Shown here: positions 38,601 through 48,535 of the stretch, one piece after another
How positions within the stretch are numbered: the first letter of the stretch is position 1
How the letters are laid out: every line of letters starts with the position of its first letter
Source of the DNA: Auanema rhodensis
Lineage: Eukaryota > Animalia > Nematoda
Assembly: GCA_964057225.1 (NCBI GenBank)
Contig: OZ059899.1
Coordinates: 12,586,001-12,650,000 of the forward strand
DNA length: 64,000 bases
Reading direction: 5' to 3'
The notes under the pieces: model-generated
Database searches by the model: none
What the model was told of the DNA's origin: nothing
The model's input: only the letters and a program-made list of their open reading frames with translations
Position numbers and translations under genes: made by a program

Positions 38601-41600
38601 TCCATCCTATAGTCTTTTTCAATTTAACTATGTAAGGAAAACAACTAAATGAGGTCGTTTGAGTTCAATTTTACTCAAATCGATCCTCACATAACTCATG
38701 GTAAAAGGCACAGTAGACAGATGGGCTGAATCGACGATCATGCTTCTGAATTCAGCTATAGAAGATCTCCAATTACGTCTTGCTAAGGAGATAGAGGGAA
38801 AAAGAGGGAAGATGAAGAAAACGAAAGATACTTGTCTCTTGTCTAGATCCATAAACGGAAGAGCAAACAATGAAAAACTAACCAGCTAGTCTGGCCTCAT
38901 GGCATGCGTCGAACATTTCCGGCTGAATATCCGGATTCTCATCGGCTATCGTCTCTCCTACTGCTACAAATCGCTCTATAGCTGCCTCAACAGCACTTCC
39001 AACCTGAATAGAGGCAACGATTAAAAGTTTTTTTTGGTCAAAGGATCAATGTGTCTTACCTTGAGAGCTGCTCGAATTGCCCGTTCTGACTTAGGCCGTC
39101 CATTGTGCAGATAGCTCTCTTTGAAGTTAACTAACGTAGTGATCTGTAATTCACGACCTAGAGTACGCCAATTTATATCTGGCTCTTTGGAAGCAGTAAC
39201 ATTCGCTAAAGCCATAAGAAGCCTTCCCGAATCACCAGGAACGGCTGATTCGGATATTGTGATGGACTGAGGACCAGTAGATGGTAGGCAACAATTCATC
39301 TTTGTATCAGGTGAAGATAGACGTAAAGCCCACGATGATCTAGATTGTGTTAGACCACGGCTATTATGATTCATCATGTTGACCGGCTCTACGCTGCGCC
39401 TCGAAGACACAATATCATATATACTTCGAGGTGAATGATAGCAGTGCGTTAAGTGACCAGTAGCAAGCATATGATTTTGAGCTGGAGAAATAGATTGACG
39501 GCCGTAAAAGGCAGGAATACTAGTCGACCGTTGACGTCGCGCAAAGCTGTATCGACTAGTACCAGAACTATGAGAACTTGCAATGGGCGATATGGAAGCT
39601 GAGCCCACAGAATTCATCCAAAACGTTAAAAGTTTCTGCGGGAATATGGAAATGAGAGCTAAATAAGAGAAGCTGTTATAGGAGGAATAAAAAAATAAAA
39701 GCCAAAGAGAGAAAAAAACGATTTAAGAAACCGACAAGATGTTAGAAGGGTGGGAAACACCAATATGTATGACAAGACAATGGCTCGGACACACTGTGTG
39801 CTGCTCATTAGGTATTCTACGGGATTTAAAAGACACAAGTGTCCGATTTAAAGAGTCTGACGACAACATAGTATGTAGTATTTGCGAACGATTTTCAAAA
39901 AAAAAACTTTTGTTTCTTCATTTTCTCTGCATTTCCTGAATTACACAACATATTGATGTTAAAAAAGACTGAAAGAGGCTCAAAAAAGTAAGAATAGCCG
40001 GAACGAAATTGGAAGTACGGATAATTGGAGAGACAATATCGAAGAAATGCTGAATTAAATGAAAATTATGGAAATAGATGTATGATGAGTGTCGAGTAGG
40101 GCAGAAGGAGAAGGAATAGCAAAACTTAAGACTAATAATAAATGGAAAGGTGAGACGGCAATGCAGAGGCAGCTTAAGGATATAAAATGAAAAAAAGCTT
40201 TCAACTCGCATATGCGCCTCAAACTTTTGATAAAAAAGGCTTATAACGATAATGAAAAACTTGTCAAAGATGTTAGTTAGCATCTCATCAACGAAAGCTA
40301 TCATCTTTTGGCAAAAATATATAGGAAAATACGACAATATTATAATATTTGTTCCGTTAATACACATGCACACATGCAGAGCCTATATAAGGCTTCGCTA
40401 GCAACAAAATATGAAGGGAACTGCCAGCTTCTTAAAGATCGGGAAGGTAAATGTTGATGGCTCAAACACGCCCCTCGTATTCTTCCCCTTTTGTGCCTGC
40501 CTCCCTTTCACTATAATAGCCTATTTAACATAGTTTGATGACAAATATGGGTATAGGTCGTGGCAGAATTTTGAAGAGCAAGTTGCGTATATCTTTGATA
40601 CATTTTGGGAGCTTTTTTCAGCTATTTCGATTATTTCTAATGACATATATGTATATATGTGTATCAAGGACCTGCTCTAGAGATCAGCCACGGAAAGCGG
40701 CGACATCCGGGGCAACGAGGTAGAGCCATTTTCCAAGAGCATAACAGGACATGTGTGTGATGCTCAACTACAACATACGAATCACAAGATGAGGATGCAT
40801 GATGGTTTCTGGATTTCGTGTTGATTGAACTCTGTTTTTCTTGAAATTTGCTATGTAAGGAAATTCTTGAATTTGGAAGTAGAGCCCTTGCAAATAAGAT
40901 CAGAAACTGTTTTTTCCTATGGTTGTCTGCTATGCACTCTGAAGGCTCGAATGAAAAGAAATCCACAAATGGATATTTTTTTCAGTTAAAGATAGTCTTG
41001 GAGCTTAAAAACCCAATGTCAATACTCGTACTCATAGAAGTCGAGAAAGGGCCCACGGCAACTGCTCTTCATTGCCAGTGTCAAGCAATCAGACGGGGCT
41101 GTTCATATCACTCGATAGATAGAGGTAAAACAGAAGAAAAGACACGAAGAAAAGAGTGGGAAGCGAAATTCGAGAACAACTTTGCAATCCTGAAGACTGT
41201 TACGTACATATATCATGATTTTAAACTATAAAAAAGAAATAAAACAAACATGAAGTTCATAAACTACGGATATAAGTTGATAAATGAGAAGCGTTGGTGG
41301 TGAAAATACGAACACTTTTCACCAAAACTATAACGGAATTCCAATGCTTCCGTGTAGTGCAGCAAACATGACCACAAACCCAGGATTTGGCTAGTCTTTG
41401 TCGGAACATTGCTTTTCATTGGCTAATTAAGACAGACAAAAGCTGGCTAGATGATGTTGCTCAGCTGAGCATCAGTTCATCCACATATGGGGCGAATTTG
41501 TATGAATGCTTTTTGGAAATGGAGCATCTAGGGAACGATGTATATTTCCGTCAGTTAAACAATTATTTTTTCTTATTCATCTATAAATTGGTCTTAAAAC

Positions 41601-41907
41601 TAAAGCGGAAAATCCATTTGTAGTTAACAATATGAGTGCTACTAGCGATGTTGCTGCTTCAGACATTGGCCAAAACATAATCTAATAAGCTAAGTTTGTC
41701 TTTCAATCATGTCAACTTACTTAGAAGTCAACAAAGTAAAAAGCAATTGCAGAAAAAGGAAGAATTCAAATTAGACCATACCTGAGAAACTAAGGGAATA
41801 AGAGTCCGTTCTATCGAATTGGTTTTAATTTCCAGATTGCGAGCATCGAAGCCTAATGAGGTACTAGGCGGACCAGTGGAGTCACTTATATAACCCGATA
41901 TGGACAT
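32628..41907 (-). CDS. ctn-1: Alpha-catulin (vinculin/alpha-catenin family)
   Basis: Exon 41782-41907 MSISG...LEIKTNSIERTLIPLVSQ; 39060-39143 ITTLVNFKE...RAALK; then VGSAVEAAIERFVAVGETIADENPDI, LVRASRQLLSSVTRVLLLADRVLVKQ, QDFTDSAYTPHHHRE, LLTSEVDAEAEKWDEYAENDIVKRAK, AMSSMAYNMYLFTRGDGPLKTTHDLFTQAE and VDSVIQETKNLMNEIAKLVTASFVCATK. Last exon YEIEFRGG...NNNL* (TAG 32630-32628). Confidence 0.93.
34900..35460 (-). CDS. ctn-1: Alternative C-terminal read-through extension of ctn-1 (186 aa)
   Basis: The frame stays open past the donor GGG|GTGAGC (35461/35460) as VSTMTSSG...RISLILDDLQRITMN*. Composition is coding-like, and a minus-strand AATAAA lies near 34435. Confidence 0.7.
   Translation of the reverse strand: MSTMTSSGMTSPRKTSSCSSASSSVALGTNGGLAMRAPRTTTTPSRGSSKLPFARSFESQTRTTTLYGDGDSTASSCSLSQLDDVEPNPLNPSLNSHVSNHRTHPICENGNYRQSPAGSTHRYISSQERLLTNGNNGNVLAPAGANVMQQAGDELSICSTTNSDEKRQFEYRISLILDDLQRITMN
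39060..39617 (-). CDS. ctn-1: Alternative first coding exon of ctn-1 (158-aa Ser-rich extension fused to exon 2)
   Basis: The ORF MNSVGSASISP... runs in frame through the internal acceptor TTACAG|ATC (39143) into ITTLVNFKE. A CCCGCAG acceptor lies about 20 nt before its ATG. Confidence 0.7.
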
Positions 41908-43739
41908 TCCCTGAAGACAGAAAAGCTCATAAGATGTTATTTGAATAGACAACGAATACAAAAATGAGATGAAAATGCCGGGAAATCAAAAAATAGTGAG
42001 AAATACATTTTTTAATATCAATATAACGTGAAAAATTACTGAAATCTATAGCACAGAAAGGTTAAATGAATTAATATATCTTCGTTTATTTCTTCTTCAT
42101 TTTTTCGATTTCAATAAAAATAAGAATAAGGAGACGGAAAACAAAATAATAAAACCAAAGAAGGTTACGTATGTAGCTTGCAGCTGCCATGCTGCCTCAC
42201 AGCAGCGATGAAGTAGAAAAAAAACGGAACTGGATACTATATATCTATATTTTGGTCACAATGTTCAGTTAAATAAAGAAAAAATGGCCTGAATTTGAAA
42301 AGAATAACTAAACGTTTGTCAGAAGCTGTTTTCAGGCTCAGAAATTTGTGAACGACAAGCATTCTCCTACGAAAAAAACATATGGAAAACAGCACGACAT
42401 TTATTGAAATGTCACTTAGATTGCTTTTAAGCTTTGCTTTTAATGTTTTGAAACCATAATAACACAAAGTTGCTAAAAATTGCATATTTCCGTTTTAATT
42501 AGTGATAATAGGCCAAGGTAATTAGTGATTAAAGTTGAGATATGGCCTTGAAAACGAGATGCCCGAAAAATAGTAGACGAAACCAATAACATTTCCGTTT
42601 TGGTTTACAAAACGAGAAAAAGAAAGAAAATCAAGAATGAATAAGTATAGAAAGCTTGTTTCAACATGATAAAGTAGTAAATTTATAAAGAAAATCGACG
42701 ATGTTCACTACATTCAGCTCAGAAAGAAGAATTGTAGCTGAATAAATAGAAACATTTGGAATAAAGTTGGTTGGGGGAGGTGAAATATTCACATTGGTGG
42801 TCAATGAGGAATCATGAACGAAACTGAATGGAGGAGAATTGAAATATATCAAGTTACAGGAGTAGCACGCTAAATTACATTACATCAATTCTTCAATGTT
42901 TAATTGTCTAAATATCATTACCTAATACAGAGGAAGAATAGAAAAGAAATCGGGTAAGACTATTGCTTAAAGCTTTACGACGAGATTCAAGAAACAAATT
43001 GAATGTAAGACATGGTGATTGGGTTGAAAGCGAAGGCGTCAAACTGCTTATAGTCATCCATACTAGGCCAAATACACACACAACCACACACCACACATGC
43101 TGGACTTAAACCAAATAGTGAAAGACATATACGATTCTGACCATAAGCAACTAATAAGCTCGTGGTTTTTATTGTTTTTATTCAAAATTTGATGATAAAT
43201 AAAGAAAAAAGAATAGAATATATTTTTCTCTCTATATATATAGTCTAACGATGTTATTGGTTTATTAAACATGTACATATAAGTCAAATAAGAAAGGAAT
43301 ATATCAGTGTAGCATTGAATATACATACAAAATAGCTCAAATACATATTCACACTATTGAAATGTGCAAGATTTAAAAGATGCTGCTTGTAGTTATACAT
43401 CAGTTAAAACACTCTTAAGCTTAAATCTTCATATTAATAGCAGATGTTAGAGGAAAGTTAGTCTGAAACCACCGAAGGAACTTTATGTCCAGGGTCGTTC
43501 TAGTAGAAAGAGAGAGAGAGAGAGCGACATGTGTGTATTGGCGGGGGTGCACCACAATCGATAGCAAACGGACGGACGGGCCCCACCCTCACCAGGGAAT
43601 GAGACCTCAGCAGCACTTGCTGACGGATAAACCTTTTAAGTTTAAATTAGCTATAAGAAAAGTTATTTTATATTGTTGTATTGAAGAGTTAAAAGCTTAA
43701 AAAAATATAGAACTGTCTATTTGCTTGATCAGCTAGTTT

Positions 43740-44490
43740 GTTTGCGTTATGAACGCCGCGGAGCGAAGAGACGCCAATCATCCCGCGAGATTGCCAAGAT
43801 TTGTAGACCTCAAAGGCGCTTTTTCTAAGCGAGACCTATCTCATACTTTGTAACACTTGTGAAAAGAATAATATGTAAATGTTTTTTTTTAAAGTAATTA
43901 TGTAAATTACCATATTATTATAGAATTTCACAATAAGTCAACAGGATAAGTTAATAAAGCGTCTTCAACATAAAAAAATATCTTATCTGCTTTATCTACA
44001 ATTTTCACTCCAAGTTAATATATCTTACCAACTTATCAAACAATTATCAAAGGTCAATCTTGGAAAAAAGTTGTATCCTATATTATTACTTAACGATAAA
44101 TTGATTATTTTTCTTATATTTACTAAAAAAAACTTGATTTTTTTTTATTTTTATCCAACAACCACTCCATATACTAAACTCACAGTTGGATATTTCGTAT
44201 ACAACATACTAACACGGATATAAGGTTGGACTGATCGGAAAACGGTGCCTCAGATTATTGCTACAAAAATTGGTCTCGCACAGATTCGCTGAGTATTTAA
44301 CGCGTTACAAACGTGGCTGTTTAAAAATAGTTCTTATTTGTACTTTGATTTAATTAAATTGATTTTTAAACTGTTTTTTTAAAAGCTCTTACCATAAATA
44401 TATATTGTAAACATCTATGCGCATTAATTTATCCTATTTTTATAATATTCTATATTTAAATAAGTTGCTAATATCACTAACTTTAAGGAA
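43740..44490. promoter_or_regulatory. Promoter region between divergently transcribed ctn-1 and NOP58
   Basis: CpG-enriched patches at 43742-43836 and 44230-44320, an inverted GCGAGACC/GGTCTCGC pair, an AT-rich outron-like stretch and a TTTAAG acceptor 3 nt before the NOP58 ATG. Confidence 0.55.
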
Positions 44491-46395
44491 ATGTTAGTTC
44501 TGTATGAAACAGGAGCGGGTTACGCCATATTTAAAGTAAATGATGAAAAGAAACTTAAAAATGTAGATAATATTTGGGATGAATTTGCCACCGCCAAGAA
44601 AGCTCAAGAACAGTAAGATTTTTTTGAAAATTTCCATTATTTATGTTTATTATTTAGGTTGCAATTGATCTCATTCAAAAAGTTTAAGAGTACTACTGAA
44701 GCTGTTGAAGCTAACACCTCAATTTTTGATGGAAAGATCAATAAGACTCTTAAGAAGCTTATTAAGTCTAAGGTTGAAGAAGGAGAGTCTCTTGCTGTCG
44801 GTGATGCCAAGTTAGGAAATTTAATCAAGGTATTTTTAACTGATATTCTGTTGCTAATATATCTATTATAGGAAAAGTTAGAAGTTAGCTGTGTTCACAA
44901 TGCTGGAATCAATGAGTTAATGAGAGGAATCAGAGCTCATGTCGATTCACTTCTTGGAGAACACAAAACCGAGATGAACGCTATGAATCTTGCCGTTGCT
45001 CACTCTCTTGGAAGATATAAAGTTAAATTCAACCCAGAAAAAATTGATACTATGATCGTCCAGGTTTGCTTTTAACAGATAATTGTTTAAAATTATTTTT
45101 CTTGTTAGGCTGTTTCCCTTCTTGATGATTTGGATAAGGAATTGAACAATTATGTAATGAGATGCAGAGAATGGTACGGATGGCACTTCCCCGAACTTGG
45201 AAAAATTCTCCAAGATCATATGGCTTTTGCTAAGGTTTGGTTCTACTTCAATTTATAGTAGCTATATTTTTTTTTACAGATTGTAAAGGCTATTGGAATG
45301 AGACAAAACGCTATTAATACCGATCTTTCAAGCATTCTTCCAGAAGAACTTGAAGCTAAAGTTAAGGAAGAGGCTGAAATCTCTATGGGTACTGATATTT
45401 CTAAGATTGATTTGATTCACATTTCTGGTCTCTGTGACCAAGTTATTGAGTTAACACAATACAGGTATTCGAAATGCTTCTTTTTTCTGTTTTATAAATT
45501 GTTGTTTCAGAACTCAGCTTTATGATTACCTCAAGAACAGAATGGCTGCTCTTGCTCCTAATCTTACCTGTCTTCTTGGAGAATTAGTTGGAGCTCGTCT
45601 CATCTCTCATGCTGGATCTCTCGTTTCCTTGGCCAAGGCCCCTGCTTCCACTGTTCAGATCCTTGGAGCTGAGAAGGCTAGTATTGGTCACATTGTGACA
45701 TTATTTTCCTTCTATGATTATATTTTTTAATGGGATTTGATTAGTGGTTGTTGTGTGTTAGGTATTTTATGGGGGGATTTTTGCGATCTACGCTTTAGTT
45801 AGTAATATTCTTACTAACATCTAATCTTTCAGGCTCTTTTCCGTGCCCTCAAGACCAAGAAGGACACTCCTAAGTACGGTCTCATCTATCATGCCCAACT
45901 TATCACTCAAGCCCCAGCTAAGCTGAAGGGAAAGGTAAAGCGTCTTAGTAGCAAAATTTTATTTTTCATGTTGTGGTTGTTTAGATGGCCAGAAAGCTCG
46001 CTGCTAAGTGTGCCTTGGCTACCCGTATTGATGCTCTGTCTGACGAAAGCAAGGCTGCTGAAGTCGGTATTGAAAGCAGAGCTGCTTTGGAGAACGTTTT
46101 GAGAAACGAAATGGAGAGAGGACCAAAGAAGATTGGTGGTGCTACTCATAAGCATGAAAAATATCATTTCAAGAGGTAACATTTCAAATCACAGTTTGAT
46201 TTCAATTTTTTTTTCAGTGAAACCTTCGAATATGATGGATCCCATGATGCCCCTAAGCCAAACAAGAAACATAAGTTTGAAGAAGATGATGATGATGAGC
46301 AAAAGCCTGTCGTCAAGAAGCCTAAGGTTGAGGTAGAAGAAGAGGAACAGGAAACCCCCAAGGAAAAGAAGAAGAAGAAGGATAAGTCCCAATAA
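44491..46395 (+). CDS. nol-58: Nucleolar protein 58, box C/D snoRNP core protein
   Basis: [15 protein letters not shown]..., [135 protein letters not shown], and a Lys/Glu tail ending DKSQ*. One intron needs a GC donor. AATAAA at 46477. Confidence 0.96.
45677..45832 (+). other. GC-AG intron of NOP58 (156 nt, structured)
   Basis: The conserved GAEK|ALFRALK is restored only by splicing AAG|GCTAGT to CTTTCAG|GCT. Confidence 0.88.
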
Positions 46396-46612
46396 GACTA
46401 TATATAAGACTAAACATTGTTATTTGTTTTCGTTACTTGTTGTGAAAATTATTTCTTTGTTGACTGTTGAATTCTGAATAAAAGGAATTAGAACTTTAGA
46501 CAATTATGACTACTATCTGTTCGGCGTATTCAATATGCATTGTAAATGAATTCGCGGAATGACTGCTTCGATATTTCATAGGTTTTTAATTTAAAAACAA
46601 TACATATGTATA

Positions 46613-48535
46613 TTACATTATAAGGAATTGATCATTCGGGAATTTTTTCGTTAATTTAAGGTCTTGTTTGGCACGTGTACATCGACCATTAATGCATTTA
46701 GCTTTGTAACAGATTTCAGTTCCTTCAAATCCTTCGCAATTTCCACCTAATTTTACTTTGCTCATGCACATGGGATCCTTGTTCTCAACAGTTCCACAGA
46801 ATAAATATCTGCGAAAAGGTATATCTGATTCAGTTTCTATTCAATTTTTAACTTACGGTGAGCCACAGTCTCGATTTATGGCATTACATGTGGGTCTTGC
46901 GTCGAATTCATACATTTCTTCAGTGTATAAATTGGATAGAGCATTACGATTTGTAAAAGGCTGTAAATGAAGATATATCAGGCTTTAAAGCTTTGAACAA
47001 CTTTTAAAAATGGCATTTTGCTGTCAATAAAATGCCAAGCGGGGAAACATTTAGGATCAGATTTAGGATATTGAGTCTCTCGCTCCTCTTTCGTCTGAAA
47101 TGGTCCAAGGAAACATGCGCCAATTTGATAGGCAAAAACCTGTTTATTTTGCCGCCAGGTTTCAAAGATGAGATCAATCATAGAGTGGTGGTATATGAAA
47201 ATCACGTCATTGGATGAACTATGAGATTGGCCCATATCACCACCTGAAAACGTAATATTTTCTACTTGATTAAGATACATATAAACAAAACTGACTAATG
47301 AAAAAATGAACATAATCATGGGAGTATTCTAACATTCTAGCGTCAAGCGTATGGTTCATGGGACATGTCTGAAAGAAATTATTATATCTTTATATCTAAA
47401 ACCTTTAATACTGTCATAGGTAATGTAGCTCCAAGAACCATATTAATATCATCATTTGTTGTTAACCAGTCAACTCTGGCATGATTTAATAGTTCTCCGG
47501 ATGGGTCATCATGATAAGCTCTTTGGATATGTGGTCGGCCCTGGAACTCATACTACGATGTTTCGTCTCTTCTAGAACAACTCACTTCCATTGTTGTCCA
47601 GTTGGCGTAGGGTCCAGTTATCACATATCCATCCACGTCAACTTCTCCCAAAAAGAGATTTGAAAACATTATAGAATCATAAGGATCAGGTAGGTACGCA
47701 TCTAAAGTGGAATCCCAGTACGGAATTCCCATGTTTACATCTTGATTGTATCGCCGGAGTACAAGTTCAACTCTAAAGAAAAAAAAATGAACTGATCTTT
47801 GCTATGTGTTTTAATAACGAAAGTAAACAAGTAAAAAAAACAGATTTCACTTTGGAATTACGAATGAACCAACCGTTTCAGAAATTCACGATGCCATAAA
47901 GTAAAAGCTGGACCAGAGTGGACTCCAGAATATTTATGAATCCGACTAAGTCTATTGTAAACATTATTGGATTTTAAATAATTTATAGTATACTAAATAG
48001 AAAATAATTCAAAATAGAAATCTTATTTTATATTTTTACCTCAAACAGCCGTCTTTGCTTATCCGATAACATCCGAATCTCAGTTCTTTTAGCTTTTTTA
48101 AGGATCTGCTTATTAGGAAGAACGCATTCATTGTTCTCTATTTTGCCTTTAAATGAATAAGTGCTAGAATATGGTGCTTAGAGCTAATTACCATCAAAGT
48201 AGGGACACACACATTTCCTAGTTAAGCATGGCAAATATTGAGCTTCTTTCCATGTCCAATCTGGAGGAATAAACACATCATCTTCAGGAACTCGATGCTG
48301 TCCGAAACCAGCTCGGTCAGCATCAGCTGGTTCAACCTATGATAGGTAGTGTGTGAAAGCTAGTCACGAGACAATATATTCTTACTCTACGATGATCTTG
48401 ATGGGGAACACGAAACCAAGGCTGTTCGAGAACCGTCGTATATGTATGATTAGCAAGAGTTATCTCCTGCCGAAAAACAAATCCAAATATTGAAAAAAAA
48501 CTAAGAAACAAGCAGCTAAGAAACAACGCGACCAT
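46613..48535 (-). CDS. Secreted tyrosinase (type-3 di-copper), nematode tyr family
   Basis: Signal peptide MVALFLSCLFLSFFSIFG, CLTRKCVCPYFDG, CuA IHKYSGVHSGPAFTLWHREFLKR, GIPYWDSTLD, CuB SHDYVHFFISGDM...NDVIFIYHHSMIDLIFETWRQ, and a Cys-rich tail CMSKVKLGGNCEGFEGTEICY...FLIM*. All six copper-binding His are present. Confidence 0.93.

What the first reader, a model, noticed from the sequence alone, without database searches (positions are those of the whole stretch)
45677..45832. NOP58 intron looks like a structure-controlled splicing/NMD autoregulatory switch
Seen: (1) The intron is 156 nt, about three times the other NOP58 introns. (2) The only frame-preserving donor is the non-canonical AAG|GCTAGT. 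(3) A canonical donor TTAG|GTATTT at 45762 would leave a 71-nt intron and keep 85 nt containing an in-frame TAA (45728-45730). The GT at +4 (45681) frameshifts to TAA 45871, and retention also hits the stop. (4) The downstream donor lies in the 3' arm of a G.U-rich stem: 45707-45717 with 45767-45777, 45720-45724 with 45761-45765, 45728-45732 with 45756-45760. (5) The 5' arm carries a C-box-like AUGAUUA (45714-45720), with a second UGAUUA at 45738, but there is no perfect CUGA D box. Known: human NOP56 is autoregulated through an intronic C/D element (snoRD86) that switches splice donors, and several C. elegans ribosomal protein genes use alternative donors coupled to NMD. Inference: excess C/D snoRNP proteins remodel the stem, expose the GT donor and send NOP58 mRNA to NMD.
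Basis: partly seen in the sequence, partly recalled or inferred. Interest (0 to 1): 0.85.

Follow-up and report, generated by a model that had tools for sequence, protein, structure and literature searches.

The report
Conserved hairpin hiding NOP58's GC splice donor
In a nematode NOP58 gene, the end of exon 6 and the start of a long GC-AG intron form a conserved RNA hairpin that buries the productive splice donor and leaves a downstream stop-causing donor free, so it is probably a dosage-control switch for this snoRNP protein, though no alternative transcript has yet been seen.

Summary
Intron 6 (45677-45832) is 156 nt against 42-50 nt for the other seven. Its donor is GC, and spliced RNA contigs from four runs skip exactly these 156 nt. 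The GT at 45762 would give a stop.

New evidence comes from the closest relative found, Auanema sp. JU1783 (89% protein identity, same gene order). It has the same intron, the same GC donor and the same downstream TGTTAG|GTATTTTA. The first 93 intron bases are 83% identical, against 56-59% at neutral sites.

A different structure is. Exon bases 45648-45676 pair with intron bases up to 45747 in a long hairpin that encloses the GC donor (consensus z -4.4; control windows -2.0 to +1.7). All 33 pairs are kept in both species.

This is a k-turn-like layout, found in 0.6% of shuffles.

Best reading: a lockable hairpin controls the choice between the two donors. The binding factor is unproven and no unproductive isoform was seen. 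It is not a snoRNA. Scan notes report a GC-AG intron in this genome's NOP56 (unchecked).

The parts
44491..46395 (+). NOP58 coding region. Nine exons: 44491-44612, 44658-44829, 44872-45063, 45109-45234, 45280-45464, 45511-45676, 45833-45934, 45985-46175, 46218-46395. 477 aa.
   Evidence: Spliced translation is open. All 8 joints are seen in RNA contigs. Nop domain match. 89% identity to Auanema sp. JU1783 NOP58.
45677..45832 (+). Intron 6, 156 nt, GC-AG.
   Evidence: The orthologous 153-nt GC-AG intron is in L007 2685-2837.
45645..45750 (+). Conserved long hairpin spanning the exon 6/intron 6 junction. Helices: H1 45648-51/45744-47; H2 45655-66/45727-29 plus 45732-40; H3 45669-83/45702-16; H4 45687-90/45696-99.
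   Evidence: Both species give the same fold. Consensus energy is -24.9 kcal/mol, column-shuffle z -4.4, 0 of 500 shuffles as good. 34 control windows give z -2.0 to +1.7. All 33 pairs are kept and 5 vary on one side only.
45653..45676 (+). Last 8 codons of exon 6, forming the 5' strand of H2/H3. All third codon positions are identical between the two species.
   Evidence: 8 of 8 here against 33 of 56 across the exon.
45669..45672 (+). CUGA in the exon (codons GCU GAG). This is the D-box-like, non-bulged strand of the k-turn-like motif.
45673..45684 (+). Exon-intron junction GAAG|GCUAGUAU. GAAG|G pairs with CCUUC (45708-45712). Intron +4 to +7 (AGUA) pairs with UAUU (45702-45705).
   Evidence: The inner hairpin 45673-45712 folds at -11.9 and -11.2 kcal/mol in the two species.
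45687..45699 (+). Apical stem-loop, GUCAC-AUU-GUGAC. It is 5 bp in both species but reached by different pairs.
   Evidence: In L007, changes at alignment columns 42 and 56 create a new A-U pair, while changes at columns 50/51 remove the C-G pair.
45708..45720 (+). CCUUC (C-helix strand), then a 3-nt bulge YAU, then GAUUA. This is the C-box-like bulged strand: G45716 faces A45672, A45717 faces G45671, U45718 faces U45670, and U45719 faces C45669 as a mismatch.
   Evidence: the strict descriptor occurs in 0.63% of 20,000 intron shuffles. The segment is invariant in L007 except the first bulge base.
45723..45732 (+). Variable segment. It holds the in-frame TAA at 45728-45730. Bases 45727-45729 pair with exon UGG 45664-45666.
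   Evidence: All three changes are wobble-compatible.
45733..45751 (+). 19-nt invariant run (GGATTTGATTAGTGGTTGT).
45756..45769 (+). 14-nt invariant TGTTAG|GTATTTTA. It holds the downstream GT donor (45762) and is also a 3'ss-like YAG placed next to a 5'ss. It lies outside the hairpin and is unpaired in the consensus.
45770..45832 (+). Diverged 3' part of the intron, ending in the acceptor CTTTCAG. It includes a species-specific hairpin at 45798-45819 that holds TACTAAC.
   Evidence: Identity is 55%. Hairpin z is -4.4 with boundaries chosen after the fact, and it is absent from L007.

Best explanation
Shown:
- Intron 6 of NOP58 is a genuine GC-AG intron.
- About 30 nt of exon 6 and the first roughly 75 nt of the intron form a conserved hairpin of about 100 nt. 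It base-pairs the whole U1-binding region of the productive GC donor.
- Fifteen nucleotides beyond the hairpin lies an invariant, unpaired GT donor. Its use adds 85 nt and a premature stop.

Inferred:
- The hairpin sets how often the weak GC donor is used rather than the GT donor. Output of NOP58 mRNA is therefore tuned by unproductive splicing followed by nonsense-mediated decay.

More speculative:
- Next to the junction helix is a k-turn-like motif: exon CUGA facing intron AUGAUUA across a 3-nt bulge.
- An L7Ae-family protein such as SNU13, perhaps followed by NOP58 or NOP56, could bind it when in excess.
- Binding would lock the hairpin and close a negative feedback loop.
For: - GC-AG splicing is seen in RNA contigs of four runs.
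- The sister species has the same intron, GC donor and GT donor.
- The block 45677-45769 is 77/93 identical. Fourfold sites are 56% identical and the interiors of the other seven introns 59% (P about 8e-7).
- Seven neighbouring tyrosinase introns are also diverged.
- Changes in the read-through frame are mostly non-synonymous, and both species carry a stop.
- Both species fold the same way, with z -3.1 and -2.4.
- The consensus fold has z -4.1 to -4.4, and 0 of 500 shuffles do as well.
- 34 control windows of the same alignment reach z -2.0 at best.
- All 33 pairs are kept. The 5 changes in paired columns are all pair-preserving. Eight changes fall in the 40 unpaired columns.
- Synonymous sites are invariant in the last 8 codons of exon 6.
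- The strict k-turn descriptor occurs in 0.63% of shuffles.
- Precedents: NOP56/SNORD86 (PMC7038934, PMC11028025), 15.5K-bound K-loops that repress host-intron splicing (bioRxiv 10.64898/2026.08.03.742641), and archaeal L7Ae (PMC5539422, PMC6298567).
Against: - No contig uses 45762 or retains the intron in any of the four runs.
- No truncated 'GAEKASI...' product is in the protein collection. Contigs and clustering hide rare forms, so this is weak evidence.
- Only two species carry the element, and they are 86% identical here. There are no double compensatory changes, so the consensus z-score largely reflects shared sequence.
- On single-sequence stability the region ranks only third of 140 windows in the gene.
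- The k-turn lacks the canonical fourth pair (U facing C instead of G-C) and has almost no non-canonical stem beyond U.U.
- Looser k-turn descriptors are common by chance, at 23-43%.
- A very stable hairpin over the donor sits oddly with the GC donor being the main one used.
- Strongylids and C. auriculariae have a plain GT intron at this site without the block.
Confidence: 0.45

Rival explanations
1. The hairpin is a constitutive splicing aid, not a sensor. It is a fixed structural element that helps the weak GC donor work or keeps the nearby GT decoy from being used, with no feedback and no regulated unproductive isoform.
For: Only the GC-donor product is seen in RNA contigs. Structural splicing enhancers and 'zipper' stems are known in short yeast introns (title and abstract of PMC12311795). 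The conservation and the fold fit this reading as well.
Against: A helix over positions -4 to +7 of a donor normally lowers U1 access rather than helping it. A single C-to-T change would repair the donor, and loss of the GT would remove the decoy, yet both features are kept across a divergence that has saturated neutral sites.
Confidence: 0.2
2. The intron is two abutting introns, or is removed by recursive splicing. An 85-nt GC...TTAG piece is removed first. This regenerates aag|GTATTT, and the remaining 71-nt GT...AG piece is then removed. The invariant TGTTAG|GTATTTTA is a zero-length-exon ratchet site.
For: A 3'ss-like and a 5'ss-like site are juxtaposed and invariant in both species. TGTTAG resembles this gene's own acceptors, and aag|GTATTT is identical to the intron 2 donor. 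Relatives have a 65-113-nt GT intron at this site, close to the size of the 3' piece.
Against: This does not explain why the 85-nt piece and the preceding exon synonymous sites are conserved or why they fold. Recursive splicing is known for very long introns, not for 156 nt (own knowledge). The final mRNA is the same either way, so nothing here tests it.
Confidence: 0.1
3. The conserved block is an intron-encoded small RNA, such as an atypical snoRNA-like or K-loop-type RNA. It is released after splicing and acts elsewhere, and the inner GT is incidental.
For: NOP56 and NOP58 are classic snoRNA host genes (own knowledge; PMC7038934). Scan notes report snoRNAs in this genome's NOP56 introns (s1-419758, s1-419736, unchecked). 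The block is 85-93 nt long and has invariant UGAU motifs.
Against: - There is no Rfam match even at E = 10 in either species.
- There is no C box/D box pair, terminal stem or H/ACA layout inside the intron.
- The intron alone has no significant consensus fold (z -1.0).
- Conservation starts at intron base +1, reaches into the exon, and ends 8 nt past the GT donor.
- There are no other copies in the window or in metagenomes.
Confidence: 0.1
4. One reading: the downstream GT donor is held in a G.U-rich stem (45707-17/45767-77 and so on), which excess C/D snoRNP proteins remodel to expose it.
For: The stem is in the minimum-energy fold of this species' intron. In L007 the GT donor can sit in a different small local hairpin, AGGUA/UACCU, so some masking of the GT donor may exist in both species.
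Against: In L007, 10 of the 23 pairs are broken, no better than slid controls. The G-rich 3' arm is absent there. The CCUUC...AUGA strand is used by the conserved junction hairpin instead.
Confidence: 0.07
5. There is no RNA function. The block is conserved as a DNA-level element such as an enhancer, or through a local low mutation rate or recent gene flow between the two lineages.
For: Only two species were compared, and the result rests on one alignment.
Against: Conservation is sharply bounded, while the flanking intron and synonymous sites are saturated. Substitutions avoid or preserve pairs.
Confidence: 0.05

Closest known systems
Human NOP56 pre-mRNA / SNORD86 switch (Lykke-Andersen et al. 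2018, as described in PMC7038934 and PMC11028025)
   Same: The host gene encodes a core box C/D snoRNP protein. An upstream productive donor, an intervening conserved element and a downstream donor are laid out in the same order. Use of the downstream donor gives a premature stop and NMD. Assembly of the element is said to deactivate the upstream donor.
   Different: There the element is a bona fide C/D snoRNA lying wholly in the intron and conserved in eutherians. Here there is no snoRNA, half of the structure is exon, the upstream donor is GC, the gene is NOP58, and the element is seen only in the Auanema lineage. No isoform or protein-binding data exist.
Yeast RPL30 autoregulation (own knowledge: L30, an L7Ae-family protein, binds a k-turn formed by exon 1 and the 5' splice-site region of its own pre-mRNA)
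   Same: A k-turn-type internal loop sits next to a helix containing the 5' splice site. The structure is built from exon plus intron. The presumed ligand is from the L7Ae/L30e family. The feedback acts on a ribosome-biogenesis gene.
   Different: RPL30 control leads to unspliced RNA, not a switch to a second donor. The protein regulated here would not be the k-turn binder itself unless NOP58 joins the complex.
15.5K-bound intronic K-loop/K-turn RNAs (klRNAs/ktRNAs) that repress host-intron excision in mammals (bioRxiv 10.64898/2026.08.03.742641)
   Same: C/D-type motifs with U.U at 3b:3n act in cis to lower splicing of the host intron through 15.5K (SNU13).
   Different: By definition klRNAs have a 5' C box and a 3' D box at the ends of a released intronic RNA, and they lack a C-stem. 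Here the order is D (exon) then C-like (intron), with a 5-bp C-stem that contains the splice junction. No released RNA is expected.
Unproductive splicing of C. elegans rpl-12, rpl-7a and other genes (Mitrovich and Anderson 2000, as cited in PMC5765348)
   Same: This is a nematode case where alternative splice-site use inside an intron gives a PTC-bearing, NMD-degraded mRNA of a ribosome-related gene. The alternatively spliced intron region is conserved (own knowledge).
   Different: Those isoforms were demonstrated in smg mutants. No GC donor or junction hairpin has been described for them, to my knowledge.
Regulated GC-AG introns in nematodes (let-2 intron 10; Farrer et al. 2002, as cited in PMC2490688)
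   Same: A conserved C at +2 is kept because a weak donor allows regulation. The remaining donor positions are a strong match (here +4 to +8, AGUAU).
   Different: In let-2 the choice is between mutually exclusive exons. In that study most C. elegans GC donors (21 of 26) were not conserved in C. briggsae.
Archaeal L7Ae binding k-turns in 5' leaders of its own mRNA (PMC5539422, PMC6298567)
   Same: Feedback on the C/D RNP system through a protein-dependent k-turn in an mRNA of the system.
   Different: That control is translational and in prokaryotes, with no splicing involved.

Membership tests
U2-type GC-AG intron | GC at +1/+2, AG at the 3' end, otherwise a good donor match, and removal from mRNA | tested here: met
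   aag|GCUAGUAU...uuucag. Positions -2, -1, +1 and +4 to +8 can pair with U1. RNA contigs skip exactly 156 nt, and the only register with a terminal AG is GC..AG.
Box C/D snoRNA | C box RUGAUGA near the 5' end and D box CUGA near the 3' end of a 60-100-nt intronic RNA, joined by a terminal stem | tested here: not met
   The intron holds only AUGAUUA and UGAUUA. There is no CUGA in the conserved intron part, and a CUGA in L007 lies outside the block. There is no terminal stem.
Box C/D snoRNA | Match to a curated covariance model | tested here: not met
   No Rfam 15 match at gathering score in the window. None at E up to 10 in 45500-46000. In L007 2600-2900 the only hit is a chance miRNA match of 14.9 bits against a 95-bit threshold.
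H/ACA snoRNA | Two hairpins with pockets, an H box, and ACA 3 nt from the 3' end, all conserved | tested here: not met
   The 3' half of the intron, including the ACA at 45817-45819 and its 8-bp hairpin, is not conserved in L007.
Kink-turn (C'/D'-type) | C-helix, 3-nt bulge, tandem G.A/A.G pairs, a -1b:-1n C-G pair, and U.U at 3b:3n | tested here: met
   GAAGG/CCUUC helix, bulge YAU, G45716.A45672, A45717.G45671, U45718.U45670, and -1b:-1n = C45712-G45673. The descriptor occurs in 0.63% of shuffles. This is a sequence-level match only.
Kink-turn (C'/D'-type) | Non-canonical stem continued by Watson-Crick pairs (4b:4n G-C in C/D boxes) | tested here: not met
   U45719 faces C45669, and the next positions do not pair.
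Kink-turn (C'/D'-type) | Bound by SNU13/15.5K/L7Ae | not testable with these tools
   Needs EMSA or RIP.
NOP56/SNORD86-type autoregulatory switch | Tandem donors flanking a conserved element in a snoRNP core-protein gene, where the downstream donor gives a PTC | tested here: met
   Donors at 45677 (GC) and 45762 (GT). There is a stop in both species. The block is conserved.
NOP56/SNORD86-type autoregulatory switch | The element is a functional C/D snoRNA | tested here: not met
   See the C/D snoRNA rows above.
NOP56/SNORD86-type autoregulatory switch | The downstream-donor isoform exists, is NMD-sensitive, and responds to snoRNP protein levels | tested here: inconclusive
   The isoform is not present in contigs of four RNA runs or among stored proteins. 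Contigs drop rare variants, and no raw reads or NMD-deficient data were available.
Recursive splice site | A 3'ss placed directly next to a regenerated 5'ss | tested here: met
   TGTTAG|GTATTTTA is invariant in both species. Joining exon 6 to 45762 gives aag|GTATTT.
Recursive splice site | Splicing intermediates are observed | not testable with these tools
   Needs raw reads or lariat sequencing.
3'-tailed mirtron / miRNA hairpin | A stable hairpin of about 22 bp starting at intron +1 | tested here: not met
   The intron-only consensus fold is -7.5 kcal/mol with z -1.0.

The most novel reading that the evidence does not exclude
A snoRNA-free sensor: a k-turn built from NOP58's own coding sequence (the CUGA of the invariant Ala-Glu codons) and an intronic C-box-like strand. 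Free SNU13/NOP proteins would clamp it so that the productive GC donor is hidden and splicing shifts to a poison GT donor. This would be an independent invention, in a nematode lineage, of the snoRNP homeostasis loop that eutherians run through SNORD86 in NOP56. It may be paired with a similar GC-AG device in this genome's NOP56.
Probability: 0.15. Interest if true: 0.85.

Novelty: new variant of a known kind. Interest (0 to 1): 0.64.

Why it matters
Cells must keep box C/D snoRNP proteins in balance with snoRNAs and ribosome production. So far a splicing-based feedback has been worked out only for mammalian NOP56.

A conserved hairpin that buries the donor of a NOP58 intron, beside a k-turn-like motif and a poison donor, would show three things:
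- The same control logic can arise without a snoRNA.
- It can arise in the paralogous gene.
- It can arise in an animal with 45-nt introns.

The model is compact, at about 125 nt. Two Auanema-group species are available for genetics. A synonymous single-base change (GCU to GCC) removes the CUGA. Weak GC donors are suspected to exist because they permit regulation, and this case would make that idea directly testable.

Tried and rejected
- **Rfam.** Searches of the window, the locus and the sister locus found nothing.
- **Repeats.** The intron has no other copy in the window; only 10-15-nt chance matches appeared.
- **Intron-only folds.** The whole intron gives z -1.45. The intron-only consensus is -7.5 kcal/mol with z -1.0. 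A helix between the GC donor and 45738-45751 is no better than 18% of random 22-mers.
It was tested on the two-species alignment and is not conserved.
- **K-turn within the intron.** A pairing of AUGA with UGAUUA can be drawn, but it occurs in 43% of shuffles.
- **Coding extension.** The substitutions are mostly non-synonymous and a stop lies in frame.
- **Older origin of the block.** Introns at the same site in Ancylostoma, Haemonchus, Dictyocaulus and C. auriculariae show no significant likeness (P 0.09 or higher). Patches that looked similar by eye were chance.
- **Metagenome pattern scan.** Four hits, all chance. One lies inside a bacterial PRPP-synthetase-like ORF.
- **Search for the read-through or truncated product.** Fragments and 177-562-aa proteins were searched and none was found.
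- **Exon-3 search of protein representatives.** It gave mostly fragments and one spurious bacterial repeat protein, P0122.
- **Single-sequence stability scan.** The region ranks third of 140 windows, so stability alone is not decisive.
Full report
**The gene and the intron.**
The + strand of 44491-46395 encodes a 477-aa NOP58 in nine exons, with a Nop-domain match. Seven introns are 42-50 nt and GT-AG. Intron 6 (45677-45832) is 156 nt, and its only frame-preserving donor is aag|GCTAGT.

Four public runs from one study hold contigs that are 99% or more identical to the window and skip all eight introns, so they are spliced RNA. At intron 6 they skip 156 nt with 5 nt of slack, and GC..AG is the only register with a terminal AG. 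No contig covers the intron interior or uses another junction.

- GT at 45762 (tag|GTATTT, the same hexamer as the intron 2 donor) keeps 85 nt with TAA at 45728-45730.
- GT at 45681 shifts the frame to a TAA at 45871.

**Relatives.**
An exon-based search and a profile search recovered nematode NOP58 proteins. The closest is Auanema sp. JU1783 (P0287), at 89% identity. Its locus L007 has a tyrosinase gene downstream on the opposite strand, as the window does.

L007 has the same intron at the same codon boundary. It is 153 nt long, with the identical donor aag|GCTAGTATT, so the GC is not an assembly error.

The same intron position carries plain GT introns of 65-113 nt in these species:
- Ancylostoma duodenale
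- Haemonchus contortus
- Dictyocaulus viviparus
- Caenorhabditis auriculariae

The intron is absent from C. nigoni, Diploscapter pachys, Mesorhabditis belari and several metagenomic nematodes.

**A conserved block.**
In a global alignment of the two genes, the other seven introns are 51-63% identical and the exons 77-89%. Other measures:

| Region | Identity |
|---|---|
| Fourfold-degenerate sites | 56% |
| Interiors of the other seven introns | 59% |
| First 93 nt of intron 6 (45677-45769), no gap | 77/93 |
| Last ~60 nt of intron 6 | 55% |

For the 93-nt block the binomial P is about 8e-7. It is 8e-4 if both splice-site motifs are left out.

Conservation stops 8 nt after the inner GT.

In the read-through frame the changes are mostly non-synonymous, and both species hit a stop, so the block is not a coding extension.

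All seven introns of the neighbouring tyrosinase gene are GT-AG and diverged.

**What the block is not.**
- It has no Rfam match.
- It has no C/D or H/ACA layout inside the intron.
- It has no repeat elsewhere in the window.
- It has no homologue in metagenomes; the four hits were chance.
- It has no significant likeness to the introns of more distant species.
- Folding the intron alone gives a weak consensus with z -1.0.

**What it is.**
The last eight codons of exon 6 are identical at every third position, against 33/56 across the exon. I therefore folded the exon end and the intron together.

Window 45645-45772 and the matching L007 stretch give the same long hairpin: -34.2 kcal/mol (z -3.1) and -31.8 kcal/mol (z -2.4). 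Support for the consensus fold:
- It is -25.35 kcal/mol over 128 nt, with z -4.1 against column shuffles.
- Over 45645-45750 it has z -4.4, and 0 of 500 shuffles do as well.
- Thirty-four control windows of the same length, taken from the exons of the same alignment, span z -2.0 to +1.7.

All 33 pairs are standard pairs in both species. Of the 13 substitutions in 106 columns:
- Five lie in paired columns, and all five preserve pairing. Three of these are in the otherwise variable segment.
- Eight lie in the 40 unpaired columns.
- Two of those eight create a new apical pair in L007, while another apical pair is lost there.

As a caution, single-sequence stability ranks only third of 140 windows across the gene. 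There are no double compensatory changes, and there are only two species.

**Anatomy.**
- H3 pairs exon GAAG plus intron G(+1) (45673-45677) with CCUUC (45708-45712). It also pairs intron +4 to +7 (45680-45683) with 45702-45705. The whole U1-binding site of the GC donor is therefore helical.
- H4 is a small apical stem.
- H2 and H1 pair exon 45648-45666 with the invariant 19-mer region.
- The inner GT donor lies 15 nt past the base of the hairpin and is unpaired in the consensus.

This gives G.A, A.G and U.U pairs and a C-G closing pair, which is a C'/D'-type k-turn layout. A strict descriptor of this layout occurs in 0.63% of 20,000 shuffles of the intron.

The fourth pair is a U-C mismatch where canonical boxes have G-C. 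Looser descriptors are common by chance. The k-turn is therefore a reasoned lead, not a finding.

**Mechanism.**
- Shown: a real, conserved GC-AG intron; a conserved hairpin over its donor; and a conserved, accessible, stop-causing GT donor.
- Inferred: the hairpin tunes the choice of donor and so the NOP58 output.
- Speculative: SNU13-type binding at the k-turn locks the hairpin and gives feedback.

The good donor is hidden, rather than the bad donor being uncovered.

That would free the GC donor and cover the GT donor. L007 could cover its GT donor with a different small hairpin. A two-state switch is therefore conceivable but untested.

**Comparison with known systems.**
- The layout matches human NOP56/SNORD86, where the snoRNP conformation deactivates the upstream donor and the downstream donor gives an NMD substrate (PMC7038934, PMC11028025). 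No snoRNA is present here.
- A k-turn at a 5' splice site bound by an L7Ae-family protein is the logic of yeast RPL30 (own knowledge).
- A 2026 preprint reports that 15.5K-bound intronic K-loops repress host-intron splicing in mammals (10.64898/2026.08.03.742641). Those are released RNAs with the C box at the 5' end and the D box at the 3' end, which is the reverse order from here.
- Nematode precedents are the unproductive splicing of rpl-12 and other genes (PMC5765348), and regulated GC donors such as in let-2 (PMC2490688).
- A full-text search found no paper that links NOP58 with unproductive splicing.

**Context from the scan's own notes (unchecked AI notes).**
- GC-AG introns are said to be frequent in this genome (s1-422414, s1-411897). 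In my window, 1 of 15 introns checked is GC-AG.
- NOP56 is said to have a GC-AG intron with a snoRNA and an immediate stop (s1-419758).
- NVL is said to have a long GC-AG intron with a structure that starts at the donor (s1-391459).

I could not reach those loci.

Noticed in passing
window 45798-45819: An 8-bp hairpin, GUUAGUAA/UUACUAAC, holds a yeast-type branch sequence UACUAAC (45812-45818) 15 nt before the acceptor. It gives z -4.4 with boundaries chosen after the fact. It is not conserved in Auanema sp. JU1783.
   Followed up: partly
window 45756-45769; L007 2764-2777: TGTTAG|GTATTTTA is at once acceptor-like and donor-like. Joining exon 6 to it regenerates aag|GTATTT, which is identical to the intron 2 donor. 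This is a possible recursive site or a zero-length exon between two abutting introns.
   Followed up: partly
P0029, P0073 versus P0046: These are genomic ORF fragments of NOP58 from unidentified non-nematode eukaryotes. After ...ILGAEK, two read 'AR...' (compatible with a GCAAGR donor) and a close relative reads 'VG...' (a GT donor). GC donors may therefore recur at this ancient intron position. The DNA was not fetched.
   Followed up: no
P0127 (Ditylenchus dipsaci model): The deposited protein model is garbled exactly at this junction. It reads ...VQLLGPRRPFDQ... and lacks the ALFRALK...YHA stretch. This may mean a gene predictor failed on an unusual splice site there.
   Followed up: no
L008 1-252 (Mesorhabditis belari): A 128-aa L7Ae-family gene, the size of SNU13, lies head to head about 750 nt upstream of NOP58. 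No such gene was seen upstream of NOP58 in the window (ORFs of 41000-44490).
   Followed up: partly
L010 1787-1864 (C. auriculariae); L009 4058-4170 (Ancylostoma): Both have the exon CUGA followed by a 4-bp helix between the exon end and a U-rich intron stretch, then a bulge and GAUU. These look like miniature versions of the k-turn layout, but such loose matches occur in 23% of shuffles.
   Followed up: yes
window 46600-48030, minus strand: A tyrosinase gene converges on NOP58, and the gene order is shared with Auanema sp. JU1783. Its seven introns seen in the alignment are all GT-AG and diverged.
   Followed up: yes
window 46025-46130 and 46220-46325: These exon 8 and exon 9 windows have single-sequence fold z-scores of -3.3 and -3.1. 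The exon 8 fold is not supported by the two-species consensus (z -1.1).
   Followed up: partly
P0316: This nematode-like NOP58 is filed under a penguin assembly (Eudyptes robustus) and marked UNVERIFIED_CONTAM. It is probably parasite or contaminant DNA in that record.
   Followed up: no
PMC5765348: fib-1 (fibrillarin) is among the genes chosen for qPCR follow-up in the C. elegans study of NMD substrates. This hints that other C/D snoRNP genes may be under NMD control in nematodes.
   Followed up: no
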